Shown here piece after piece: positions 50,486-58,505 of a stretch of DNA of 64,000 bases (its first letter is position 1; every line of letters begins with the position of its first letter). Both the position numbers and the translations under genes were made by a program. Under the pieces are notes generated by a model. It did no database searches and was not told where the DNA came from. It was given only the letters and a program-made list of their open reading frames with translations. The stretch is from positions 62,001-126,000 of IMG/VR virus record IMGVR_UViG_3300027541_000009, one strand, 5' to 3'.

Positions 50486-50567
50486 GGGTAGGTGTCCGAG
50501 TGGTTAATGGAGGCGGACTGTAAATCCGCTGGCTCTGCCTACGGGGGTTCAAATCCCTCCCTGCCCA
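50486..50567 (+). tRNA. trnY: tRNA-Tyr(GUA)
   Basis: GGGTAGG/CCTGCCC acceptor, GCGGA-CTGTAAA-TCCGC anticodon arm, long variable arm. Confidence 0.95.
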
Positions 50568-50570
50568 CCT

Positions 50571-50642
50571 GGTCCCTTCGTCTAGCGGTTAGGACACCAC
50601 CCTTTCACGGTGTAGACACGGGTTCGATTCCCGTAGGGACTA
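50571..50642 (+). tRNA. trnE: tRNA-Glu(UUC)
   Basis: GGTCCCT/AGGGACT acceptor, CTTTCAC loop, GGTTCGATTCC. Confidence 0.92.
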
Positions 50643-50644
50643 TT

Positions 50645-50736
50645 GGAAGTGTGGCAGAGAGGTCTAATGCAGTGGATTGCTAATCCGCCGATGTACCTAA
50701 GTGCATCCGTTGGTTCGAATCCAACCACTTCCGCCA
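50645..50736 (+). tRNA. trnS: tRNA-Ser(GCU), CCA encoded
   Basis: GGAAGTG/CACTTCC acceptor, TTGCTAA loop, long variable arm. Confidence 0.95.
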
Positions 50737-50808
50737 GGGAGATTAGCTCAGTGGTAGAGCAATGTGCTGATAACGCAGAGGTCGGTGGTTCAAATCCACC
50801 ATTTCCCA
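50737..50808 (+). tRNA. trnI: tRNA-Ile(GAU)
   Basis: GGGAGAT/ATTTCCC acceptor, CTGATAA loop. Confidence 0.93.
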
Positions 50809-50809
50809 C

Positions 50810-50838
50810 TTGACCAGTTTCCAAACAACTGGTACAAT
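50810..50838 (+). promoter_or_regulatory. Sigma70-like promoter with a palindromic spacer
   Basis: TTGACC-17 nt-TACAAT; ACCAGTT/AACTGGT inverted repeat. Confidence 0.6.
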
Positions 50839-50843
50839 ATAAG

Positions 50844-50908
50844 AGTTGAGAAATCAACTGCGGCATTCCCCTTCGGTAGGTTCAGGAATGGCGGCGATAG
50901 GAACCTAC
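50844..50908 (+). ncRNA. Candidate pseudoknotted RNA before tRNA-Arg
   Basis: AGTTGA-GAAA-TCAACT hairpin, then crossing stems CATTCC/GGAATG and GTAGGTTC/GAACCTAC. Confidence 0.6.
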
Positions 50909-50913
50909 TTTAT

Positions 50914-50986
50914 GGGCACATAGCATAATGGATAATGCAACATCCTTCTAAGATGACGATTGGGGGTTCGAGTCCCTCTGTGCCTG
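50914..50986 (+). tRNA. trnR: tRNA-Arg(UCU)
   Basis: GGGCACA/TGTGCCT acceptor, CTTCTAA loop. Confidence 0.92.
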
Positions 50987-51069
50987 TTGGAGTTTATCTC
51001 CATACATAAAAGTGATAGAGGGTAAGCCTCTGTTATATCCTTATGAGGTATATTACGCTTACTCCATCT

Positions 51070-51152
51070 GCTTCAGTGGTGGAACGGTAGACACAGCGGA
51101 CTTAGAATCCGCCGCCTTAAAAAGCGTGGAAGTTCAAATCTTCTCTGGAGCA
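51070..51152 (+). tRNA. trnL: tRNA-Leu(UAG)
   Basis: GCTTCAG/CTGGAGC acceptor, GCGGA-CTTAGAA-TCCGC, long variable arm. Confidence 0.93.
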
Positions 51153-51153
51153 C

Positions 51154-51182
51154 TTGACAATCAAACTTAAATAGTTTATGAT
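51154..51182 (+). promoter_or_regulatory. Sigma70-like promoter embedded in an inverted repeat
   Basis: TTGACA-17 nt-TATGAT; GACAATC/GATTGTC. Confidence 0.6.
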
Positions 51183-51191
51183 TGTCTCATT

Positions 51192-51263
51192 GCGAAAGTA
51201 ACTCAACGGTAGAGTCCCTGCCTTCCAAGCAGGTTGTTGCGAGTTCGAATCTCGTCTTTCGCT
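51192..51263 (+). tRNA. trnG: tRNA-Gly(UCC)
   Basis: GCGAAAG/CTTTCGC acceptor, CCTGC-CTTCCAA-GCAGG. Confidence 0.95.
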
Positions 51264-51300
51264 CTTGGTAGTCGTTATGCAGATAGCATAGAAAGACGCC

Positions 51301-51375
51301 AAAGGAAGTTAAGTCAAAGAATCGAGACAAGCAGACAATGCCCTTTGAACTGGTGTAAGTCCAGTAACTTCCTTT
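51301..51375 (+). ncRNA. tRNA-like structured RNA of unknown type
   Basis: 10 bp AAAGGAAGTT/AACTTCCTTT stem stacked on a T-arm-like ACTGG-TGTAAGT-CCAGT; CAAAG/CTTTG inner stem. Confidence 0.55.
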
Positions 51376-51377
51376 AT

Positions 51378-51450
51378 TCCCATCGACCGAGCAAGCGAAC
51401 GGGCCTGACTGTTAATCAGAGATTGGTAGGGGCAGTACCTACGATGGGAG
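51378..51450 (+). tRNA. trnN: tRNA-Asn(GUU), non-canonical D and T loops
   Basis: TCCCATC/GATGGGA acceptor, CTGTTAA loop, T loop GGCAGTA. Confidence 0.85.
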
Positions 51451-51453
51451 CTT

Positions 51454-51525
51454 GCCCGAATAGCTCAAAGGCAGAGCGTTTCGTTTACACCGAAAATGTT
51501 GGGGGTTCAAGTCCCTCTTCGGGCA
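51454..51525 (+). tRNA. trnV: tRNA-Val(UAC)
   Basis: GCCCGAA/TTCGGGC acceptor, TTTCG-TTTACAC-CGAAA. Confidence 0.94.
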
Positions 51526-51549
51526 CTTTACTAAAACGAATACTTGTGT

Positions 51550-51557
51550 TATAAATA
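51550..51557 (+). promoter_or_regulatory. T4-type late promoter in the loop of an RBS-occluding hairpin
   Basis: TATAAATA between CGAATAC (51537-43) and GTATTCG (51565-71). Confidence 0.75.
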
Positions 51558-51579
51558 ATAAAAGGTATTCGGTTCTATT

Positions 51580-52116
51580 ATGACTACTTGTTTAAACTGC
51601 GGGTGTGAGAACGATAAACCTAAGTTCTGCTCCCGTTCGTGTTCTGTAACCTATAATAATAAGAAGTCTCCTAAGAGGAAAAGAACTGGTTGGGACACCG
51701 CCATCTGTAATTACTGCAGTGTAGAGTTTGACTATAAGAAAAAGAGTTCTACTGGCAAGTTCTGTTCTAACAAGTGTAGTGCTGCAGCCAAGAGACAATG
51801 GACAATAGATAAGTGGAAAGTAGGAGAACTGAACCATACAGGGCAGGGTTATGTTCCCAGCGGTGTTCGTGCTTACTTATTAGAAGCGAGTGGGGGTAAG
51901 TGTTCCCTTTGTGGTTGGTCTGGAACAAACATTCATACCGGACGAACCTGCCTTGAGGTGGACCACATAGACGACGACCCTTTCAACCACGCCCCTGAAA
52001 ATCTACAAGTGGTCTGTCCCAACTGCCACGCACAAAAAACTTTACCACCCCAAAAGAGTAACGGTGGACGTTACAGTAAGGACAAGCAACATCCTAAGTT
52101 TTGTATGAATAAGTAA
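51580..52116 (+). mobile_element. Free-standing HNH homing endonuclease within the tRNA array
   Basis: N-terminal CxxC/FCSxxC zinc repeats; CSLCG...LEVDHIDDD...NLQVVCPNCH. Confidence 0.9.
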
Positions 52117-52122
52117 AAAAAT

Positions 52123-52139
52123 GAATCCCTCTGCTCCCA
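52123..52139 (+). pseudogene. Possible orphan 3' fragment of a tRNA gene
   Basis: GAATCCCTCTGCTCCCA resembles a T-arm 3' half, acceptor strand and discriminator, with no matching 5' half. Confidence 0.4.
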
Positions 52140-52167
52140 TTTGCATAAATATTTCAAAAAGAGTATA

Positions 52168-52602
52168 ATGGAAAAACTTTATAAACTCTTGAGTGATGCA
52201 CAGTCATCGCTTTTTGTTTTATTCCATAAAACTTGGGCATTTCACTGGAATGTTGTAGGTGAAGATTTCACTCAACTACATCAACTCTTTGGTGGTCAGT
52301 ATGAGACTATGTTTGAAGAGATTGATCGTCTCTCAGAACATATGCGTTATCTGAATGTAAAACCTCTCAGTTCTCTCTCAAGAATGCTTGAGGTAACTCA
52401 AATCAAAGAGGCAGCAAGTTCAACCGGAGCAAAAGAAATGCTTCAAGAACTTCTTGATAACAATACCAAGTTTTGTGAATTGATGGGAGAAATTTCGGAA
52501 GAGTCTGAAAATCAAAAGTCATATGCTACAGCAAATTTAGTTCAAGATTTGATGGAATCTCATGGTAAGTTTGTTTGGCAGTTGAGAGCACACCTGCAAT
52601 GA
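52168..52602 (+). CDS. dps: Dps / ferritin-like DNA protection protein
   Basis: HWNVVG...LHQLF...YE...IDRLSEH ferroxidase pattern; start set at ATG 52168. Confidence 0.9.
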   Translation: MEKLYKLLSDAQSSLFVLFHKTWAFHWNVVGEDFTQLHQLFGGQYETMFEEIDRLSEHMRYLNVKPLSSLSRMLEVTQIKEAASSTGAKEMLQELLDNNTKFCELMGEISEESENQKSYATANLVQDLMESHGKFVWQLRAHLQ

Positions 52603-52617
52603 TTAGGATGAAGAATA

Positions 52618-52869
52618 ATGATTTCAATAAGATGCAAAGATTGTAATAGAGAAATAACAGGACATCATTCAAAAACAGTGACCTGTGGTTGTCCTAATAT
52701 GGCAACAATTCGTGGAGATAAGATTTCAGCACTTGACTTATCTCGTATTGTTATGTTAAACTCTATTCAGAAAGAACAAAAATCAAATGTTCTGACTTCA
52801 CAAGATATTGCCTGGCAAGAGGCAAGACGCCAACGCAAAGTAAAGCGTTTGGATTTTGAGGTTCGTTGA
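52618..52869 (+). CDS. Small Cys-rich (zinc-binding) hypothetical protein
   Basis: CKDC...CGCPN. Confidence 0.7.
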   Translation: MISIRCKDCNREITGHHSKTVTCGCPNMATIRGDKISALDLSRIVMLNSIQKEQKSNVLTSQDIAWQEARRQRKVKRLDFEVR

Positions 52870-52879
52870 ACCTCCCACT

Positions 52880-52964
52880 GGAAAGGTGGTCGAGTGGTTG
52901 AAGGCTCTAGTCTTGAAAACTAGCGATGTGAAAGCATCCGTGGGTTCGAATCCCACCCTTTCCG
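52880..52964 (+). tRNA. trnS: tRNA-Ser(UGA)
   Basis: GGAAAGG/CCTTTCC acceptor, CTAGT-CTTGAAA-ACTAG, long variable arm. Confidence 0.95.
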
Positions 52965-55317: not shown

Positions 55318-55548
55318 ATGAAAATGTATCCAGAACTTTCAGATCTCCAAAAGTTTACAGTTCAAGAGTTTCAAGAAGATTTTGACAACCTAATAGAAAG
55401 AGTAGAAAATGGTGAATCATTTGTCATTACTGACGGAGAAAGAAACGCAGTGATAGTTCCATACAACGAAACCATAAAGTTTGCAGTAGAATCTAAAGTG
55501 GACGACGATGTGATACGAATACATACCGACCACGAAGAAGGTTGTTGA
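55318..55548 (+). CDS. Phd/YefM antitoxin-like small protein
   Basis: FTVQEFQEDFDNLIERVENGESFVIT...NAVIVP resembles the Phd/YefM DNA-binding fold. Confidence 0.55.
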   Translation: MKMYPELSDLQKFTVQEFQEDFDNLIERVENGESFVITDGERNAVIVPYNETIKFAVESKVDDDVIRIHTDHEEGC

Positions 55549-55573
55549 CACAGAGTTTCAGGTCCTCTATAAT
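55545..55573 (+). promoter_or_regulatory. Perfect sigma70 promoter with an inverted repeat around the -10 box
   Basis: TTGACA-17 nt-TATAAT; TTCAGGTC/GACCTGAA. Confidence 0.75.
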
Positions 55574-55753: not shown

Positions 55754-55783
55754 TTGACAGATTACCTGTCAAACCCTTATAAT
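55754..55783 (+). promoter_or_regulatory. Sigma70 promoter with an inverted repeat over the -35 box
   Basis: TTGACA-18 nt-TATAAT; TTGACAG/CTGTCAA. Confidence 0.7.
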
Positions 55784-55805: not shown

Positions 55806-56021
55806 ATGACTCTCACAGCAAAATTCAAGAAAGACGTTCAAACCCTTCGTGGTGCAGCAAACGGTGACTTCTACCTTGATGTAAAGAATCCTAAACTCTA
55901 TAAAAAGGTTCGTCGTTTTTATGAGAATGAGGGTGTAGTATTCTCTGGTGATCCACTGGATGATTATGAGATGCTTATGGAATATGTTCTTGCTGATCTT
56001 GAATCCGTTGAAGTTGCATGA
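55806..56021 (+). CDS. Conserved cyanophage-type hypothetical protein
   Basis: MTLTAKFKKDVQTLRGAANG...LDVKNPKLYKKVRR. Confidence 0.75.
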   Translation: MTLTAKFKKDVQTLRGAANGDFYLDVKNPKLYKKVRRFYENEGVVFSGDPLDDYEMLMEYVLADLESVEVA

Positions 56022-56266
56022 CAACACGACTTCCTAAGGTTCTTTTGGAACGAGAAGGATATCGCTTCGTAGAAGTTGGTATTCTTGAGATTAACGGTAA
56101 ACCCGATTACCGTCTCCAAAAACAAAATGAGTACACCAAACGCTGGAATGACATTTATCTTTTTGATAATGTTCTACAATGCTCTACTGCAATGGAGGAT
56201 ATTGAATATGCTAAATGGTTGGACCCAGACCGTGTTCCTTGTTATGTGAAAGACGATGAAGATTAA
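56018..56266 (+). CDS. Conserved cyanophage-type hypothetical protein
   Basis: GYRFVE...GKPDYRLQ...WLDPDRVPCY; ATGA overlap. Confidence 0.75.
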   Translation: MTTRLPKVLLEREGYRFVEVGILEINGKPDYRLQKQNEYTKRWNDIYLFDNVLQCSTAMEDIEYAKWLDPDRVPCYVKDDED

Positions 56267-56271
56267 TTAAA

Positions 56272-56928
56272 ATGTTAAATCATATTGAACGAATAAAAAT
56301 TTGTTCCGAAGTAGCTATTAAACTTTATTACGATTTTAATTTCGAATATAGTCTAAAAGCAAAAGCGGATGAGACAGTAGACTATTCTAAAAATCAAAAA
56401 GAACAAGTACCCTTAGAAAAAGGAGAAGCAACATCTACTGTTATACATAATATCAATGGGCAACCTCATACTTGGACAGAGAATAGGAAATACATTCAAT
56501 TTTTGAATGCAAATATGCCTTACATTCTCAAAGAATTTGGTCTCTCCAATCAACCAATTGAAGTAGCAAATTCTTGGATTAATCGTCATTCTAAAGGGGG
56601 AAGAACTGTAGAACACAAGCATCAATTTGTTGATATTGTTGTTAGTTCTTACCTTCATTGTCCACCAAATAGTGGAAATCTCTTGATAAGAGATCCATTA
56701 GAATATCATAGGGCAAATGATGTCGTAGAATCTGCTTTCTCTAAACAAGTAAAATATCAGTATCCTTGGATTGAAGTTCCTGTTAAAACAAATGAACTTG
56801 TAATCTTTCCTGGATGGGTAAATCACAAAACAGAAGAAAGCAATTCTGATTTTGATAGATATGTTATGACTTTTAATCTCAAGTATATGCATGGTCCAAT
56901 GATGGGTGAAAGTCCCGGGATGACTTAA
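56272..56928 (+). CDS. 2OG-Fe(II) oxygenase (TIGR02466-like)
   Basis: SWIN, HxH, VIFPGWVNH and RYVMTFN motifs. Confidence 0.8.
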   Translation: MLNHIERIKICSEVAIKLYYDFNFEYSLKAKADETVDYSKNQKEQVPLEKGEATSTVIHNINGQPHTWTENRKYIQFLNANMPYILKEFGLSNQPIEVANSWINRHSKGGRTVEHKHQFVDIVVSSYLHCPPNSGNLLIRDPLEYHRANDVVESAFSKQVKYQYPWIEVPVKTNELVIFPGWVNHKTEESNSDFDRYVMTFNLKYMHGPMMGESPGMT

Positions 56929-56956
56929 AAAGCGCACTGGTCGGGAGCAACCCCTT
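56911..56956 (+). repeat. Divergent copy of the 5' domain of the downstream manA-like RNA
   Basis: AGTCCCGGGATGACTTAAAA-N6-ACTGGT...CCCCTT versus AGTCCTGGAACGACTTAAAA-N6-ACTGGT at 57176. Confidence 0.8.
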
Positions 56957-57193
56957 ATGGCAAAATCTGATCTACTTCGTTGGATTGGAAACATTCTCCT
57001 CATAATTGGTTATCAAACTATGCTATGGGGAGAATTTAAATATGGTTTAATGATAAAGGTTGTTGGAGGATTACTCACAGTACCCTTTGCTATTAAACTT
57101 AAACTTTGGGATGTACTATTCTTATGTGCATTCTTTGGTATTACCGAGATATCAAAGTTAACCCAACTTTTCTTTAGTCCTGGAACGACTTAA
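56957..57193 (+). CDS. Small multi-TM membrane protein
   Basis: Hydrophobic 78 aa; flanked by the two repeat copies. Confidence 0.7.
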   Translation: MAKSDLLRWIGNILLIIGYQTMLWGEFKYGLMIKVVGGLLTVPFAIKLKLWDVLFLCAFFGITEISKLTQLFFSPGTT

Positions 57194-57325
57194 AACTTAT
57201 ACTGGTGGAGTCAAAATGACCCTATTATGAGTTTATTGCCTCTCTCAAGGGCAATTGGTGCGGATGGGACTCTCTCCCGCCTGGTTTCTTGCCTCCAGTC
57301 AAAGGGCAAGTGGCGAGCCTGAGTT
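57176..57325 (+). ncRNA. Cyanophage cis-regulatory structured RNA, manA-like (wcaG is the alternative)
   Basis: Multiple stems (AGTC/GACT, ATTGCC/GGCAAT, GGGA/TCCC, CTTGCC/GGCAAG) with GGTGCGGA and GGCGAGCC; followed by a terminator and sugar-epimerase genes; family recalled, not searched. Confidence 0.7.
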
Positions 57326-57330
57326 ACATA

Positions 57331-57359
57331 AGAGGAGTTGCATAAACTCCTCTTTTTTT
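57331..57359 (+). terminator. Intrinsic terminator after the structured RNA
   Basis: AGAGGAGTT-GCATA-AACTCCTCT followed by Ts. Confidence 0.85.
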
Positions 57360-57392
57360 GTATACTATATACTAAGAGAAATTTATTGGTCT

Positions 57393-58505
57393 ATGAGTGA
57401 GTACAAGAAAACGGCACTTGTGTTAGGTGCTGGTGGCTTTATTGGAAGTCATATGGTAAGAAGATTAAAGTCTGAAGGTTATTGGGTGCGTGGTGTAGAC
57501 CTCAAGTATCCAGAATTTTCAATTTCTGAAGCAGATGAATTCATTCAGGGAGACCTGAGGGATATGAACTTTGTTCGCCGTGTTCTTGAATTTAAAGGAG
57601 AGCAAGGAAACTTTTATAACTCAGTTCCTTATCGATATATTCTACCCTTCCATGAAATCTATCAGTTCGCTGCTGATATGGGCGGTGCAGGATTTGTTTT
57701 CACTGGAGAAAATGATGCTGATATTATGCACAACTCTGCAACCATCAACTTAAATGTTCTTGAAGCACAGCGTCAATTGAATGAAACTTTTGATGGTGTT
57801 GATAATGGCACCGCTTGTGTTCGCCCAGTATTAGATTATAAAACTAAAATTTTCTATTCTGGATCTGCTTGTATGTATCCAGAACATAATCAATTAGATC
57901 CAGACAATCCCGATTGTCGTGAAGAGTCCGCTTATCCTGCTAACCCAGATTCCGAGTATGGTTGGGAAAAACTCTTCTCAGAGAGACTCTTCTTCGCTTA
58001 TCACCGCAACTATGGTATTCCTGTGCGGGTTGCTAGGTATCATAATATCTTTGGACCTGAAGGAACCTGGACTGGTGGTAGAGAAAAAGCACCCGCAGCA
58101 ATCTGTCGTAAAGTTGCCTACCTTTCAGAGGAAGGTGGAACCATCGAGGTGTGGGGAGACGGGCTACAAACTCGTTCCTTCCTGTATATTGATGAATGCA
58201 TCGAAGCAACCCGCAGAATGATGAATAGTGATTTCATCGGACCTGTTAATATTGGTTCCGAAGAAATGGTAACCATTAATCAACTCGTAGATACTGCTGC
58301 TAAAGTTGCAGGTAAAGTCGTAGAGAAGAATCATATTGATGGTCCTCTTGGAGTTCGTGGACGCAATTCAAATAATGATTTGATTCGCGAAAAACTTGGT
58401 TGGGATTATTCACAGACTCTGGAAGAAGGTATCCGCAAGACTTATGAGTGGATTAATACGCAAATGAAAAAGGTGGAAGAGGTGAAAGGTGACAGTAAAG
58501 AATGA
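57393..58505 (+). CDS. NAD-dependent epimerase, GDP-mannose 3,5-epimerase-like
   Basis: GAGGFIG, AADMGG, YGWEK and GGREKAPAAICRK; start set at ATG 57393. Confidence 0.88.
   Translation: MSEYKKTALVLGAGGFIGSHMVRRLKSEGYWVRGVDLKYPEFSISEADEFIQGDLRDMNFVRRVLEFKGEQGNFYNSVPYRYILPFHEIYQFAADMGGAGFVFTGENDADIMHNSATINLNVLEAQRQLNETFDGVDNGTACVRPVLDYKTKIFYSGSACMYPEHNQLDPDNPDCREESAYPANPDSEYGWEKLFSERLFFAYHRNYGIPVRVARYHNIFGPEGTWTGGREKAPAAICRKVAYLSEEGGTIEVWGDGLQTRSFLYIDECIEATRRMMNSDFIGPVNIGSEEMVTINQLVDTAAKVAGKVVEKNHIDGPLGVRGRNSNNDLIREKLGWDYSQTLEEGIRKTYEWINTQMKKVEEVKGDSKE

What the first reader, a model, noticed from the sequence alone, without database searches (positions are those of the whole stretch)
56911..57325. 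Gene cassette bounded by duplicated domains of a manA-like RNA
Seen: two consecutive unrelated genes both end inside the same element (AGT CCC GGG ATG ACT TAA = SPGMT*; AGT CCT GGA ACG ACT TAA = SPGTT*). Each copy continues AAA-N6-ACTGGT, a small hairpin, and CCC..TTATG. Copy 1 supplies the ATG of the 78 aa gene, while copy 2 continues into the remainder of the structured RNA. The copies differ in sequence but keep the AGTC/GACT stem and hairpin. Inference: the RNA's 5' domain is a reusable module giving a stop codon to the upstream gene and a start plus regulation to the downstream one, so genes can be stacked integron-like at this site, or it is an autonomous regulatory unit.
Basis: partly seen in the sequence, partly recalled or inferred. 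Interest (0 to 1): 0.7.

Follow-up and report, generated by a model that had tools for sequence, protein, structure and literature searches.

The report
Small ORF nested in modular wcaG RNA
The two look-alike elements are real: they are two conserved pseudoknotted RNA modules forming an unmodelled 5' extension of the cyanophage wcaG RNA (not manA), and small genes sit in the gaps between such modules.

Summary
Copy 1 (56911-56954) and copy 2 (57176-57222) are the only two matches in the 284-kb phage genome to a model built from about 90 related modules (44.4 and 37.9 bits; next best 9 bits). The structured RNA is wcaG (RF01761, 57227-57324, 102.9 bits), not manA. Each copy is a 4-bp hairpin with an NYGGANN loop, an A-rich linker, an invariant CUGGU and a second hairpin. 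The stem shows compensatory changes. Two loop-linker pairs covary with no exception in the build set and one exception in a second set. The copies belong to two old module classes (A and B) and are not a recent duplication. At least 86% of wcaG cores sampled without reference to A or B carry such modules upstream. The 78-aa gene (phrog_2318/DUF6552-like, three predicted membrane helices) is flanked by A and B in nearly all relatives. Other ORFs occupy the inter-module gaps in some phages, mostly the gap between B and the core. Metatranscriptome contigs show the array on an early operon that ends at a terminator. There is no integrase and only two modules per genome, so "integron-like" is not supported. 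"Reusable autonomous RNA module" is supported. The function, probably cis-regulation of translation and termination, is inferred.

The parts
55754..55783 (+). Perfect sigma-70-type promoter (TTGACA, 18 nt, TATAAT) that probably drives the operon carrying the array
   Evidence: Consensus scan scores 12 of 12. RNA contig depth rises about 20-fold at 55806 in four metatranscriptomes, while DNA depth stays flat.
55806..56021 (+). 71-aa ORF, phrog_552, first gene of the operon
   Evidence: Its homologue lies directly upstream of module A in 29 related arrays.
56018..56266 (+). 82-aa ORF, phrog_481 ('gp206-like')
   Evidence: It is the commonest gene directly upstream of module A in relatives (73 of 147 arrays).
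56272..56928 (+). 2OG-Fe(II) oxygenase gene (218 aa). Its last five codons and stop lie in the hairpin of module A. It is a strain-specific insertion.
   Evidence: PF13759 E 3e-12 and phrog_81. About 20 nearest relatives lack it, as does a roughly 7% DNA variant in the same samples.
56911..56954 (+). Copy 1, a class A module. Hairpin 56911-56925, A-rich linker 56926-56937, CUGGU core at 56937-56941 (the C is the last base of the linker), second hairpin GGG/CCC 56943-56953 containing GGAG. Tertiary pairs are 56916:56934 (C-G) and 56919:56933 (G-C).
   Evidence: R1 scores 44.4 bits. Covariation is shown.
56957..57193 (+). 78-aa ORF with three predicted membrane helices (phrog_2318, DUF6552-like). 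The ATG lies 2 nt after module A, and the last codons and stop lie in the hairpin of module B.
   Evidence: It is flanked by A and B in relatives. The C-terminal tail varies with the hairpin type that follows.
57176..57222 (+). Copy 2, a class B module. Hairpin 57176-57190, linker 57191-57202, CUGGU core at 57202-57206 (the C is the last base of the linker), second hairpin GGAGUCA-AAA-UGACCC ending at 57222. Tertiary pairs are 57181:57199 (U-A) and 57184:57198 (A-U).
   Evidence: R1 scores 37.9 bits. Relatives are shown. Both tertiary pairs differ compensatorily from copy 1.
57227..57324 (+). wcaG RNA core as modelled by Rfam (classes C and D), with an internal 4-bp pseudoknot 57281-57284 : 57295-57298
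   Evidence: RF01761 scores 102.9 bits. Pseudoknot covariation is shown.
57330..57360 (+). Intrinsic terminator (10-bp stem followed by a T run) that ends the array
   Evidence: RNA depth falls about 2.5- to 4-fold after 57316, while DNA depth stays flat.
57393..58505 (+). NAD-dependent sugar epimerase/dehydratase gene downstream of the terminator
   Evidence: PF01370 E 9e-35 and PF16363 E 1e-24.

Best explanation
Copy 1 and copy 2 are two members, of different classes (A and B), of a family of 45-50-nt pseudoknotted RNA modules found in T4-like cyanophages. These modules are strung head to tail. Together with the part that Rfam calls wcaG (classes C and D) and a terminator, they form a variable array on a phage mRNA. 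Each module has a 5' half and a 3' half. The 5' half is a 4-bp hairpin whose loop pairs with the end of an A-rich linker. The 3' half is an invariant CUGGU followed by a class-specific hairpin. The modules fold on their own, so ORFs can sit in the gaps between them. In this phage the DUF6552-like 78-aa membrane protein gene lies between A and B. The likely workings, which are inferred, are as follows. The array is transcribed from the early promoter at 55754-55783. The second hairpin of module A holds the GGAG and abuts the AUG of the 78-aa ORF, so the folding state of A would set that ORF's translation. B plus the C/D core would set read-through of the terminator into the sugar-epimerase genes. 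The signal, a ligand or a protein, is unknown. The overlaps with stop codons are by-products: ORFs simply run into the module until they meet a stop. Because the modules share invariant stretches, they also serve as recombination joints through which ORFs are gained and lost.
For: Shown results:
- The two copies are the only strong matches to the module model in the window and in the genome.
- All four stem pairs show compensatory changes. Loop position 2 pairs with the linker position 4 nt before UGGU: C-G in 60 and U-A in 29 of 89 sequences, with no exception. Loop position 5 pairs with its neighbour as G-C, A-U or U-A. These pairs were not used to select the sequences. A second set gives C-G 67, U-A 10 and one exception. 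The two window copies differ compensatorily at both pairs.
- Of 50 wcaG cores fetched by a core-only pattern, 37 have an A or B module within 110 nt upstream and 6 more have one beyond an ORF.
- Array make-up varies: A-B, B-A, A-ORF-B, B-ORF-core, A+D only, and A/B upstream of a further gene, which in most such arrays proves to lie between B and the core.
- GGAG occurs in the second hairpin of A in 43 of 60 modules followed by an ORF, against 14 of 74 not followed by one (odds ratio 10.8).
- The 78-aa gene has A upstream in 77 of 79 close relatives and B downstream in 73 of 75. The association also holds at 44-58% identity.
- RNA contig depth steps up about 20-fold after the promoter, stays high across A, the ORF and B, and drops after the terminator. 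DNA depth is flat.
- Breakpoints between relatives fall at or inside the modules.
Against: - No experiment shows that the modules regulate anything. The signal is unknown.
- Thermodynamic folding of each copy alone is unremarkable (z +1.3 and -1.1).
- The second hairpin of class B is almost invariant, so it has no covariation support.
- In many arrays a late-promoter-like CTAAATA lies between B and the next gene, so B need not lie in that gene's own 5' UTR.
- In phage S-CREM1 the array is followed by a promoter and tRNA genes, not by a protein gene.
- RNA evidence comes from assembled contigs. It gives no strand information and no true transcript ends.
- The sequences are related, and the samples were capped and chosen by pattern, so the counts and the Fisher test are not phylogenetically independent.
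Confidence: 0.6

Rival explanations
1. The modules matter mainly at the DNA level, as patches of homology. In this view they resemble the PeSL cassettes of T4-type coliphages: recombination between repeated modules inserts, deletes and swaps the small ORFs between them, and any RNA role is secondary.
For: ORF content at module junctions varies among relatives. The 2OG oxygenase gene is present only in this strain, and homology resumes inside module A. The 5' halves and 3' halves of modules occur in many combinations, including a b-type hairpin in front of a class C 3' half. Low-depth contigs in the same samples skip from module to module: 56954 to 57251 and 57174 to 57330. PeSL-mediated shuffling is documented in T4-type phages (PMC2839356, PMC4122927).
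Against: There are only 1-2 such modules per genome, whereas PeSLs are numerous. The modules contain no promoter. The perfect Watson-Crick covariation of isolated loop-linker pairs is selection on a folded single strand, which homology patches alone do not explain. The A|B gap holds the same gene in 52 of 53 arrays. This rival is compatible with the best explanation as a side effect.
Confidence: 0.3
2. The modules are RNA processing or stability signals. They could be nuclease entry sites or protective structures between cistrons, and the array plus terminator could yield a stable 3'-end RNA (an sRNA). In this view they do not sense a signal.
For: Modules always sit between cistrons, right after a stop codon. 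The array lies at the 3' end of an operon and ends in a terminator. One RNA contig ends with adapter sequence at 57320, the 3' edge of the wcaG core. In S-CREM1 and in many arrays a promoter follows the array.
Against: RNA contig depth shows no sharp change at either module, although contigs are a blunt tool. The link between GGAG in module A and a following ORF points to translation.
Confidence: 0.2
3. This is an integron-like system. The modules are attC-like sites, and a site-specific recombinase stacks gene cassettes between them.
For: Different ORFs do occupy the gaps between modules in different phages.
Against: The genome has no tyrosine recombinase, while all 14 control genomes gave hits. 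It has only two modules. There are at most two or three slots, and one of them is nearly always filled by the same gene. The phage is a lytic T4-like myovirus.
Confidence: 0.03
4. The repeat is a decayed local duplication, a chance resemblance, or selection for a shared C-terminal peptide (SPG[MT]T).
For: The two elements are only 74% identical, and both overlap the ends of ORFs.
Against: Both classes are conserved in hundreds of phage contigs with compensatory changes. ORFs enter the hairpin in different frames (tails such as VTDGL or SPGMT), or stop before it. The tail of the 78-aa protein changes with the hairpin type and is predicted to be disordered.
Confidence: 0.02

Closest known systems
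wcaG RNA motif (Rfam RF01761; Weinberg et al. 2010, PMC2864571), an orphan riboswitch candidate of cyanophages
   Same: The locus contains a full-score wcaG RNA directly 3' of copy 2. It lies in a T4-like cyanophage upstream of nucleotide-sugar genes, as described for the motif. The core's own sub-domains share the plan of the copies: a hairpin, then UGGUG, then a GG...CC hairpin.
   Different: The Rfam model starts at 57227 and covers neither copy. The 5' modules have a different first hairpin (4 bp, NYGGANN loop, A-rich linker, loop-linker pairs). They can stand without the core, occur in either order, and can be separated from the core and from each other by ORFs.
manA RNA motif (RF01745)
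   Same: It is also a cyanophage riboswitch candidate, and it lies next to wcaG in phage S-CREM1.
   Different: manA gives no match in the region or the genome. The module model scores nothing inside a true manA RNA.
PeSL mobile regulatory cassettes of T4-type phages (Arbiol 2010, PMC2839356; Comeau 2014, PMC4122927)
   Same: Both are short conserved stem-loop-bearing elements between small variable ORFs in plastic regions of T4-like genomes, and gene gain or loss has breakpoints at the elements.
   Different: PeSLs combine an early promoter with a terminator-like stem-loop and are numerous in a genome. These modules have no promoter, number one or two per genome, and show RNA-type tertiary covariation.
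Small H-type pseudoknot aptamers such as preQ1-I (comparison from general knowledge, not tested here)
   Same: Both have a short hairpin followed by an A-rich tail whose 3' end pairs back to the hairpin loop, placed next to a ribosome-binding site.
   Different: There is no sequence or Rfam match. Only one or two loop-tail pairs are seen here. No ligand is known, and the modules are arrayed in tandem.
Integron attC/cassette arrays
   Same: Structured repeats bound promoter-less ORFs.
   Different: There is no integrase. There are two repeats rather than many, and one gap nearly always holds the same gene.

Membership tests
wcaG RNA (RF01761) | Covariance-model score at or above the gathering score of 42 bits | tested here: met
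   102.9 bits, full length 1-98, at 57227-57324. This applies to the core, not to the two copies.
wcaG RNA (RF01761) | The two copies themselves fall within the modelled motif | tested here: not met
   The model starts at 57227. Copy 2 ends at 57222 and copy 1 lies 270 nt upstream. No Rfam family matches either copy at E<=10. They form an unmodelled extension that is present upstream of at least 86% of sampled cores.
manA RNA (RF01745) | A covariance-model match | tested here: not met
   No hit at E<=10 in 56700-57450 and none in the 284-kb genome.
Structured RNA module (this report's classes A and B) | Hairpin stem maintained by compensatory changes | tested here: met
   All four pairs change on both sides, and 100% of cells are paired. 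Stem pairing was a selection criterion, so only the variety of pair types counts as evidence.
Structured RNA module (this report's classes A and B) | Loop-linker tertiary pairs (pseudoknot) | tested here: met
   Columns 9:27 give CG 60 and UA 29 with 0 unpaired. Columns 12:26 give GC 19, AU 11 and UA 3. None of 500 shuffles reaches this, and slid controls pair in 20-35% of cells. An independent set gives 77 of 78.
Riboswitch | Direct ligand binding that changes expression | not testable with these tools
   Only the architecture and gene context are available.
Integron cassette array | Tyrosine-recombinase integrase in the element or genome | tested here: not met
   PF00589 gives no match in the genome, while all 14 controls are positive.
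Integron cassette array | Many repeats bounding variable cassettes | tested here: not met
   Two modules in this genome and 1-2 in five complete phage genomes. The A|B gap holds the same gene in 52 of 53 arrays.
PeSL cassettes | Early promoter inside the repeated element | tested here: not met
   No promoter-like site overlaps either copy on the + strand.
PeSL cassettes | Gene gain or loss with breakpoints at the elements | tested here: met
PeSL cassettes | Excised mini-circles | not testable with these tools
   The runs are held only as assembled contigs.
phrog_2318 / DUF6552 (the 78-aa ORF) | Profile match | tested here: met
   phrog_2318 matches at E 3.8e-20 over residues 2-70. Pfam-A gave no family at E<=0.01. 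The DUF6552 label rests only on language-model similarity (0.91).

The most novel reading that the evidence does not exclude
The wcaG 'riboswitch candidate' may not be one aptamer. It may be a string of independent pseudoknot units of classes A, B, C and D, each gating the cistron or terminator that follows it. That would make it a beads-on-a-string polycistronic riboregulator specific to cyanophages. Its most constant client would be a SemiSWEET/PnuC-like three-helix membrane protein (DUF6552). That association would give a concrete lead to the unknown signal.
Probability: 0.25. Interest if true: 0.8.

Novelty: new variant of a known kind. Interest (0 to 1): 0.6.

Why it matters
wcaG has been an orphan riboswitch candidate since 2010, defined by a 98-nt model. 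These data indicate that the model covers only the 3' part of a larger modular RNA. The 5' modules are autonomous, pseudoknotted, combinable, and can be separated by ORFs. This changes three things:
- what should be probed, namely single 45-nt modules rather than the 98-nt core;
- which genes should be counted as associated, adding a conserved three-helix membrane protein and several small ORFs;
- how the hypervariable islands of cyanophage genomes are read, because the modules are fixed punctuation around which small genes come and go.

It is also a clear case of coding sequence borrowing its last codons, its stop, its start and its ribosome-binding site from a structured RNA.

Tried and rejected
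- **manA identity.** No Rfam hit, and the module model does not score inside a true manA RNA.
- **Thermodynamic folding of each copy.** Not better than shuffles, so the structural case rests on comparison of relatives only. Copy 2 plus the core and terminator folds better than shuffles (z -2.4), but that mostly reflects the known hairpins.
- **A closing helix between the linker of copy 2 and the UAUGAG after it.** It is predicted, but by eye it is not kept in relatives.
- **A 31-codon ORF starting at ATG 57226 across the wcaG core.** The ATG is absent in many relatives, so I take it as not coding.
- **Weak module hit at 51671-51696.** It lies inside a Cys-rich ORF and has no Rfam hit. I rate it as chance.
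- **Cellular genomes.** The module pattern was found on only 2 contigs from metagenome-assembled genomes among 185,579 species genomes. My guess is that these are mis-binned phage contigs, so the module looks phage-restricted.
- **Fold of the 78-aa protein against the PDB.** Nothing significant (best E 1.2). AlphaFold DB clusters give short 'PnuC'/SemiSWEET-annotated three-helix proteins at TM about 0.8 but with weak E-values of 6e-3 to 0.2. This is a lead only.
- I dropped it and did not send it elsewhere.
- **A remnant of the neighbouring gene's 3' end in the 2OG gene tail.** The tail resembles the end of the gp206-like gene in about 13 of 19 bases. This is suggestive but could be chance.

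Full report
**1. What is in the sequence**

The window comes from a 284-kb T4-like cyanomyovirus record; the finding lies at 118.9-119.3 kb of it. Two consecutive ORFs end in near-identical strings.
- ORF 56272-56928 is a 2OG-Fe(II) oxygenase (PF13759 and phrog_81) and ends AGT CCC GGG ATG ACT TAA.
- ORF 56957-57193 (78 aa) ends AGT CCT GGA ACG ACT TAA.

Each string is a 4-bp hairpin (AGTC / 7-nt loop / GACT). It is followed by TAAAA, seven more bases, TGGT, a small second hairpin, and CCC..TTATG. The repeat finder reports them as a 31-nt pair at 74% identity. The 20-nt pattern matches nowhere else in 64 kb, where 0.2 matches are expected.

Rfam places a full-length wcaG RNA (RF01761, 102.9 bits) at 57227-57324, starting 5 nt after copy 2. 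Rfam finds no manA in the region at E<=10 or in the genome. An intrinsic terminator follows at 57330-57354. A sugar epimerase/dehydratase gene starts at 57393.

**2. The copies are members of a conserved RNA module family**

A scan of IMG/VR for the 3' part of copy 2 returned the capped 120 contigs. In 86 matches the pattern lay just upstream of a wcaG core, and many had a second, copy-1-like element in front of it. The phages S-SRM01, S-SKS1, S-SZBM1, S-RS29 and S-CREM1 show the same elements.

I aligned 92 non-identical modules. All four stem pairs change on both sides: AGUC/GACU, AGAC/GUCU, CGCC/GGCG, UGCC/GGCA and CACC/GGUG. More telling are two pairs that I did not select for.
- Loop position 2 pairs with the linker base 4 nt before UGGU: C-G in 60 and U-A in 29 sequences, never anything else.
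- Loop position 5 pairs with the neighbouring linker base wherever the 12-nt linker is present: G-C 19, A-U 11, U-A 3.
- No shuffle reaches these values, and slid controls pair in only 20-35% of cells.

A second set was fetched with a different pattern and aligned by the model. It gives 77 of 78 for the first pair.

The two copies in the window differ from each other compensatorily at both pairs. Copy 1 has 56916 C : 56934 G and 56919 G : 56933 C. Copy 2 has 57181 U : 57199 A and 57184 A : 57198 U. So the 5' half of each module is a small H-type pseudoknot with an A-rich strand. Invariant positions are GG in the loop, AA in the linker, CUGGU, and one G two bases on.

The covariance model built from this alignment (R1) finds exactly two hits in the whole genome, the two copies, at 44.4 and 37.9 bits. 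The next best score in the window is 9.1 bits.

**3. Two classes, not a duplication**

Copy 1 is class A, with 3' half UGGUCGG, a variable hairpin, then CCC. Copy 2 is class B, with 3' half UGGUGGAGUC, a loop, then GACCC. Each class has recognisable orthologues in hundreds of contigs.

The wcaG core has the same plan: a hairpin, then UGGUGCGGAUGGG..CCCGCC (class C), then a hairpin and GUGGCG (class D). The first hairpin comes in two kinds. Kind b is the pseudoknotted 4-bp hairpin of both window copies. Kind a is GUUUC-stem-loop-stem abutting UGGU, as in the core. The halves occur in many combinations, including a b-type hairpin in front of a class C half.

To ask how general the 5' extension is, I fetched cores with a core-only pattern. 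Of 50 new ones, 37 have an A or B module within 110 nt upstream, 6 have one further up beyond an ORF, and 7 have none by my strict definition. Some of those seven carry variant hairpins. The Rfam model therefore describes only the 3' part of a larger modular RNA.

**4. What sits between modules**

Non-redundant arrays fetched by the two module-pattern scans were sorted by the gene in each gap.

| Gap | Content | Arrays |
|---|---|---|
| A\|B | Empty (modules adjacent) | 28 A-B and 16 B-A in the first scan |
| A\|B | 78-aa gene (44-100% identity) | 51 |
| A\|B | 78-aa gene plus a 191-aa methyltransferase-like gene (L096) | 1 |
| A\|B | Unrelated 65-aa ORF ending in a TGA inside the hairpin of B (L024) | 1 |
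| B\|core | Coiled-coil family of about 75 aa (phrog_35121-like) | about 17 |
| B\|core | 68-aa MTPYxL family | 8, plus 3 more in arrays without a B module and 1 that also carries the 78-aa gene |
| Other gaps | A 70-aa ORF; Cys-rich ORFs | a few |

Loci chosen through the 78-aa protein alone have A upstream in 77 of 79 and B downstream in 73 of 75. These are close relatives, so they are not independent.

The gene upstream of A falls into about 30 families. The main ones are gp206-like/phrog_481 (73 arrays) and phrog_552 (29 arrays). Its stop codon lies 1-13 nt before the hairpin in most arrays. In 34 of 147 it lies inside or just after the hairpin, in two different frames, giving tails such as VTDGL or SPGMT.

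The conserved part of the 78-aa protein ends at residue 71. The tail follows whichever hairpin comes next and is predicted to be disordered. So the shared SPG[MT]T ending is a by-product of ORFs running into the RNA module. It is not a feature selected in the protein.

**5. Translation start**

The ATG of the 78-aa ORF follows the second hairpin of A by 2-3 nt throughout the family. GGAG occurs in the 5' arm of that hairpin in 43 of 60 A modules followed by an ORF, against 14 of 74 not followed by one (odds ratio 10.8; not corrected for relatedness). A truncated A module sits directly in front of a 2OG oxygenase gene in other phages (L016). Module A therefore supplies the initiation region and holds the Shine-Dalgarno-like bases in a stem. 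This is the basis for proposing translational control.

**6. Transcription**

A perfect TTGACA-18-TATAAT promoter lies at 55754-55783. In four metatranscriptome runs that hold this phage, the contig word depth changes as follows.
- It rises about 20-fold at 55806; in run X15, from 90 to about 2,000.
- It stays at about 1,240 across the oxygenase gene, module A and the 78-aa ORF.
- It is about 900-1,080 over B and the core.
- It falls to about 430 after 57316.

DNA runs from the same river are flat at 220-400. One RNA contig ends in adapter sequence at 55810 and another at 57320. These are contigs, not reads, so they show presence and rough level only. They fit one early operon running from the promoter through both modules to a leaky terminator.

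**7. Recombination at the modules**

About 20 nearest relatives lack 56272-56897, the oxygenase gene. Their homology stops at the end of the gp206-like gene and resumes at 56898-56934, inside module A. A DNA variant at about 7% depth in the same samples has the gene replaced by 40 nt that make a standard class A 5' half. Low-depth contigs skip from 56954 to 57251 and from 57174 to 57330.

This resembles PeSL-mediated shuffling in T4-type coliphages (PMC2839356, PMC4122927). Here, though, the element has no promoter and there are only 1-2 per genome. No tyrosine recombinase is encoded.

**8. The 78-aa gene**

It matches phrog_2318 (E 4e-20) and is DUF6552-like by language-model features. AlphaFold gives three helices with mean pLDDT 80. 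The nearest AlphaFold-DB clusters are 70-100-aa proteins annotated PnuC or SemiSWEET, at TM about 0.8 but with weak E-values. The PDB gives nothing significant. A small transporter-like protein flanked by riboswitch-candidate modules is a suggestive pairing, but no more than that.

**9. Verdict**

- The RNA is wcaG, not manA.
- The 'integron-like' reading is not supported.
- The mechanism is inferred from anatomy and contig-level RNA data and has not been tested. It comprises cis-regulation of the following ORF and of the terminator, with recombination at modules as a side effect.
- Caveats: the collection scans were capped at 120 rows and chosen by pattern, the sequences are related, and the RNA data are assemblies.

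Noticed in passing
window 57281-57284 with 57295-57298: Inside the Rfam wcaG core, the four bases before GUUUC pair with the start of the last hairpin's loop. The pairs covary across 132 cores: CUGG/CCAG, CGAG/CUCG, CCUG/CAGG, CCAG/CUGG and CAGG/CCUG. This pseudoknot is not in the Rfam structure line.
   Followed up: partly
window 56272-56928: The 2OG-Fe(II) oxygenase gene is specific to this strain. About 20 nearest relatives lack it, as does a roughly 7% DNA variant in the same river samples. The last 19 bases before the hairpin loosely resemble the 3' end of the neighbouring gp206-like gene.
   Followed up: partly
window 55545-55573 and 55754-55783: Two perfect sigma-70 promoters (12 of 12 consensus matches) lie 200 nt apart. 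RNA contig depth jumps about 20-fold only after the second.
   Followed up: partly
window 55318-55548: A 76-aa ORF has a sub-threshold match to the Phd/YefM antitoxin family (PF02604, E 3.9e-6, 27.0 bits against a cut-off of 29.8). No toxin partner was sought.
   Followed up: no
window 50486-52964: Rfam finds a cluster of nine tRNA genes. A Cys-rich ORF starts at 51580 between two of them.
   Followed up: no
window 56957-57193: The 78-aa protein is predicted to form a three-helix membrane bundle. Its nearest AlphaFold-DB clusters are short proteins annotated PnuC or SemiSWEET (TM about 0.8, weak E-values).
   Followed up: partly
L130, L132, L135, L142 and others, just 3' of module B: In many relatives module B is followed by CTAAAAACTAAATAA, which looks like a T4-type late promoter, and then by a coiled-coil gene of about 75 aa (phrog_35121-like) that lies between B and the wcaG core. 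That gene may therefore have its own late transcript.
   Followed up: no
window 57361-57392; L001, L002, L041: Right after the terminator's T run, relatives carry TGnTATAAT-like boxes, and the window has TATACT twice. The downstream epimerase gene may have its own promoter as well as read-through transcription.
   Followed up: no
L126 (S-CREM1) 646-840: In phage S-CREM1 the array has the order B-A-core. It is followed by a perfect TTGACA/TATAAT promoter and tRNA genes, not by a protein gene.
   Followed up: no
window 56954-57330 (contig joints in runs X15, X17 and X2): Low-depth contigs in the same samples join 56954 to 57251, 57174 to 57330 and 57214 to 57274. They probably come from co-occurring relatives with fewer modules.
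   Followed up: no
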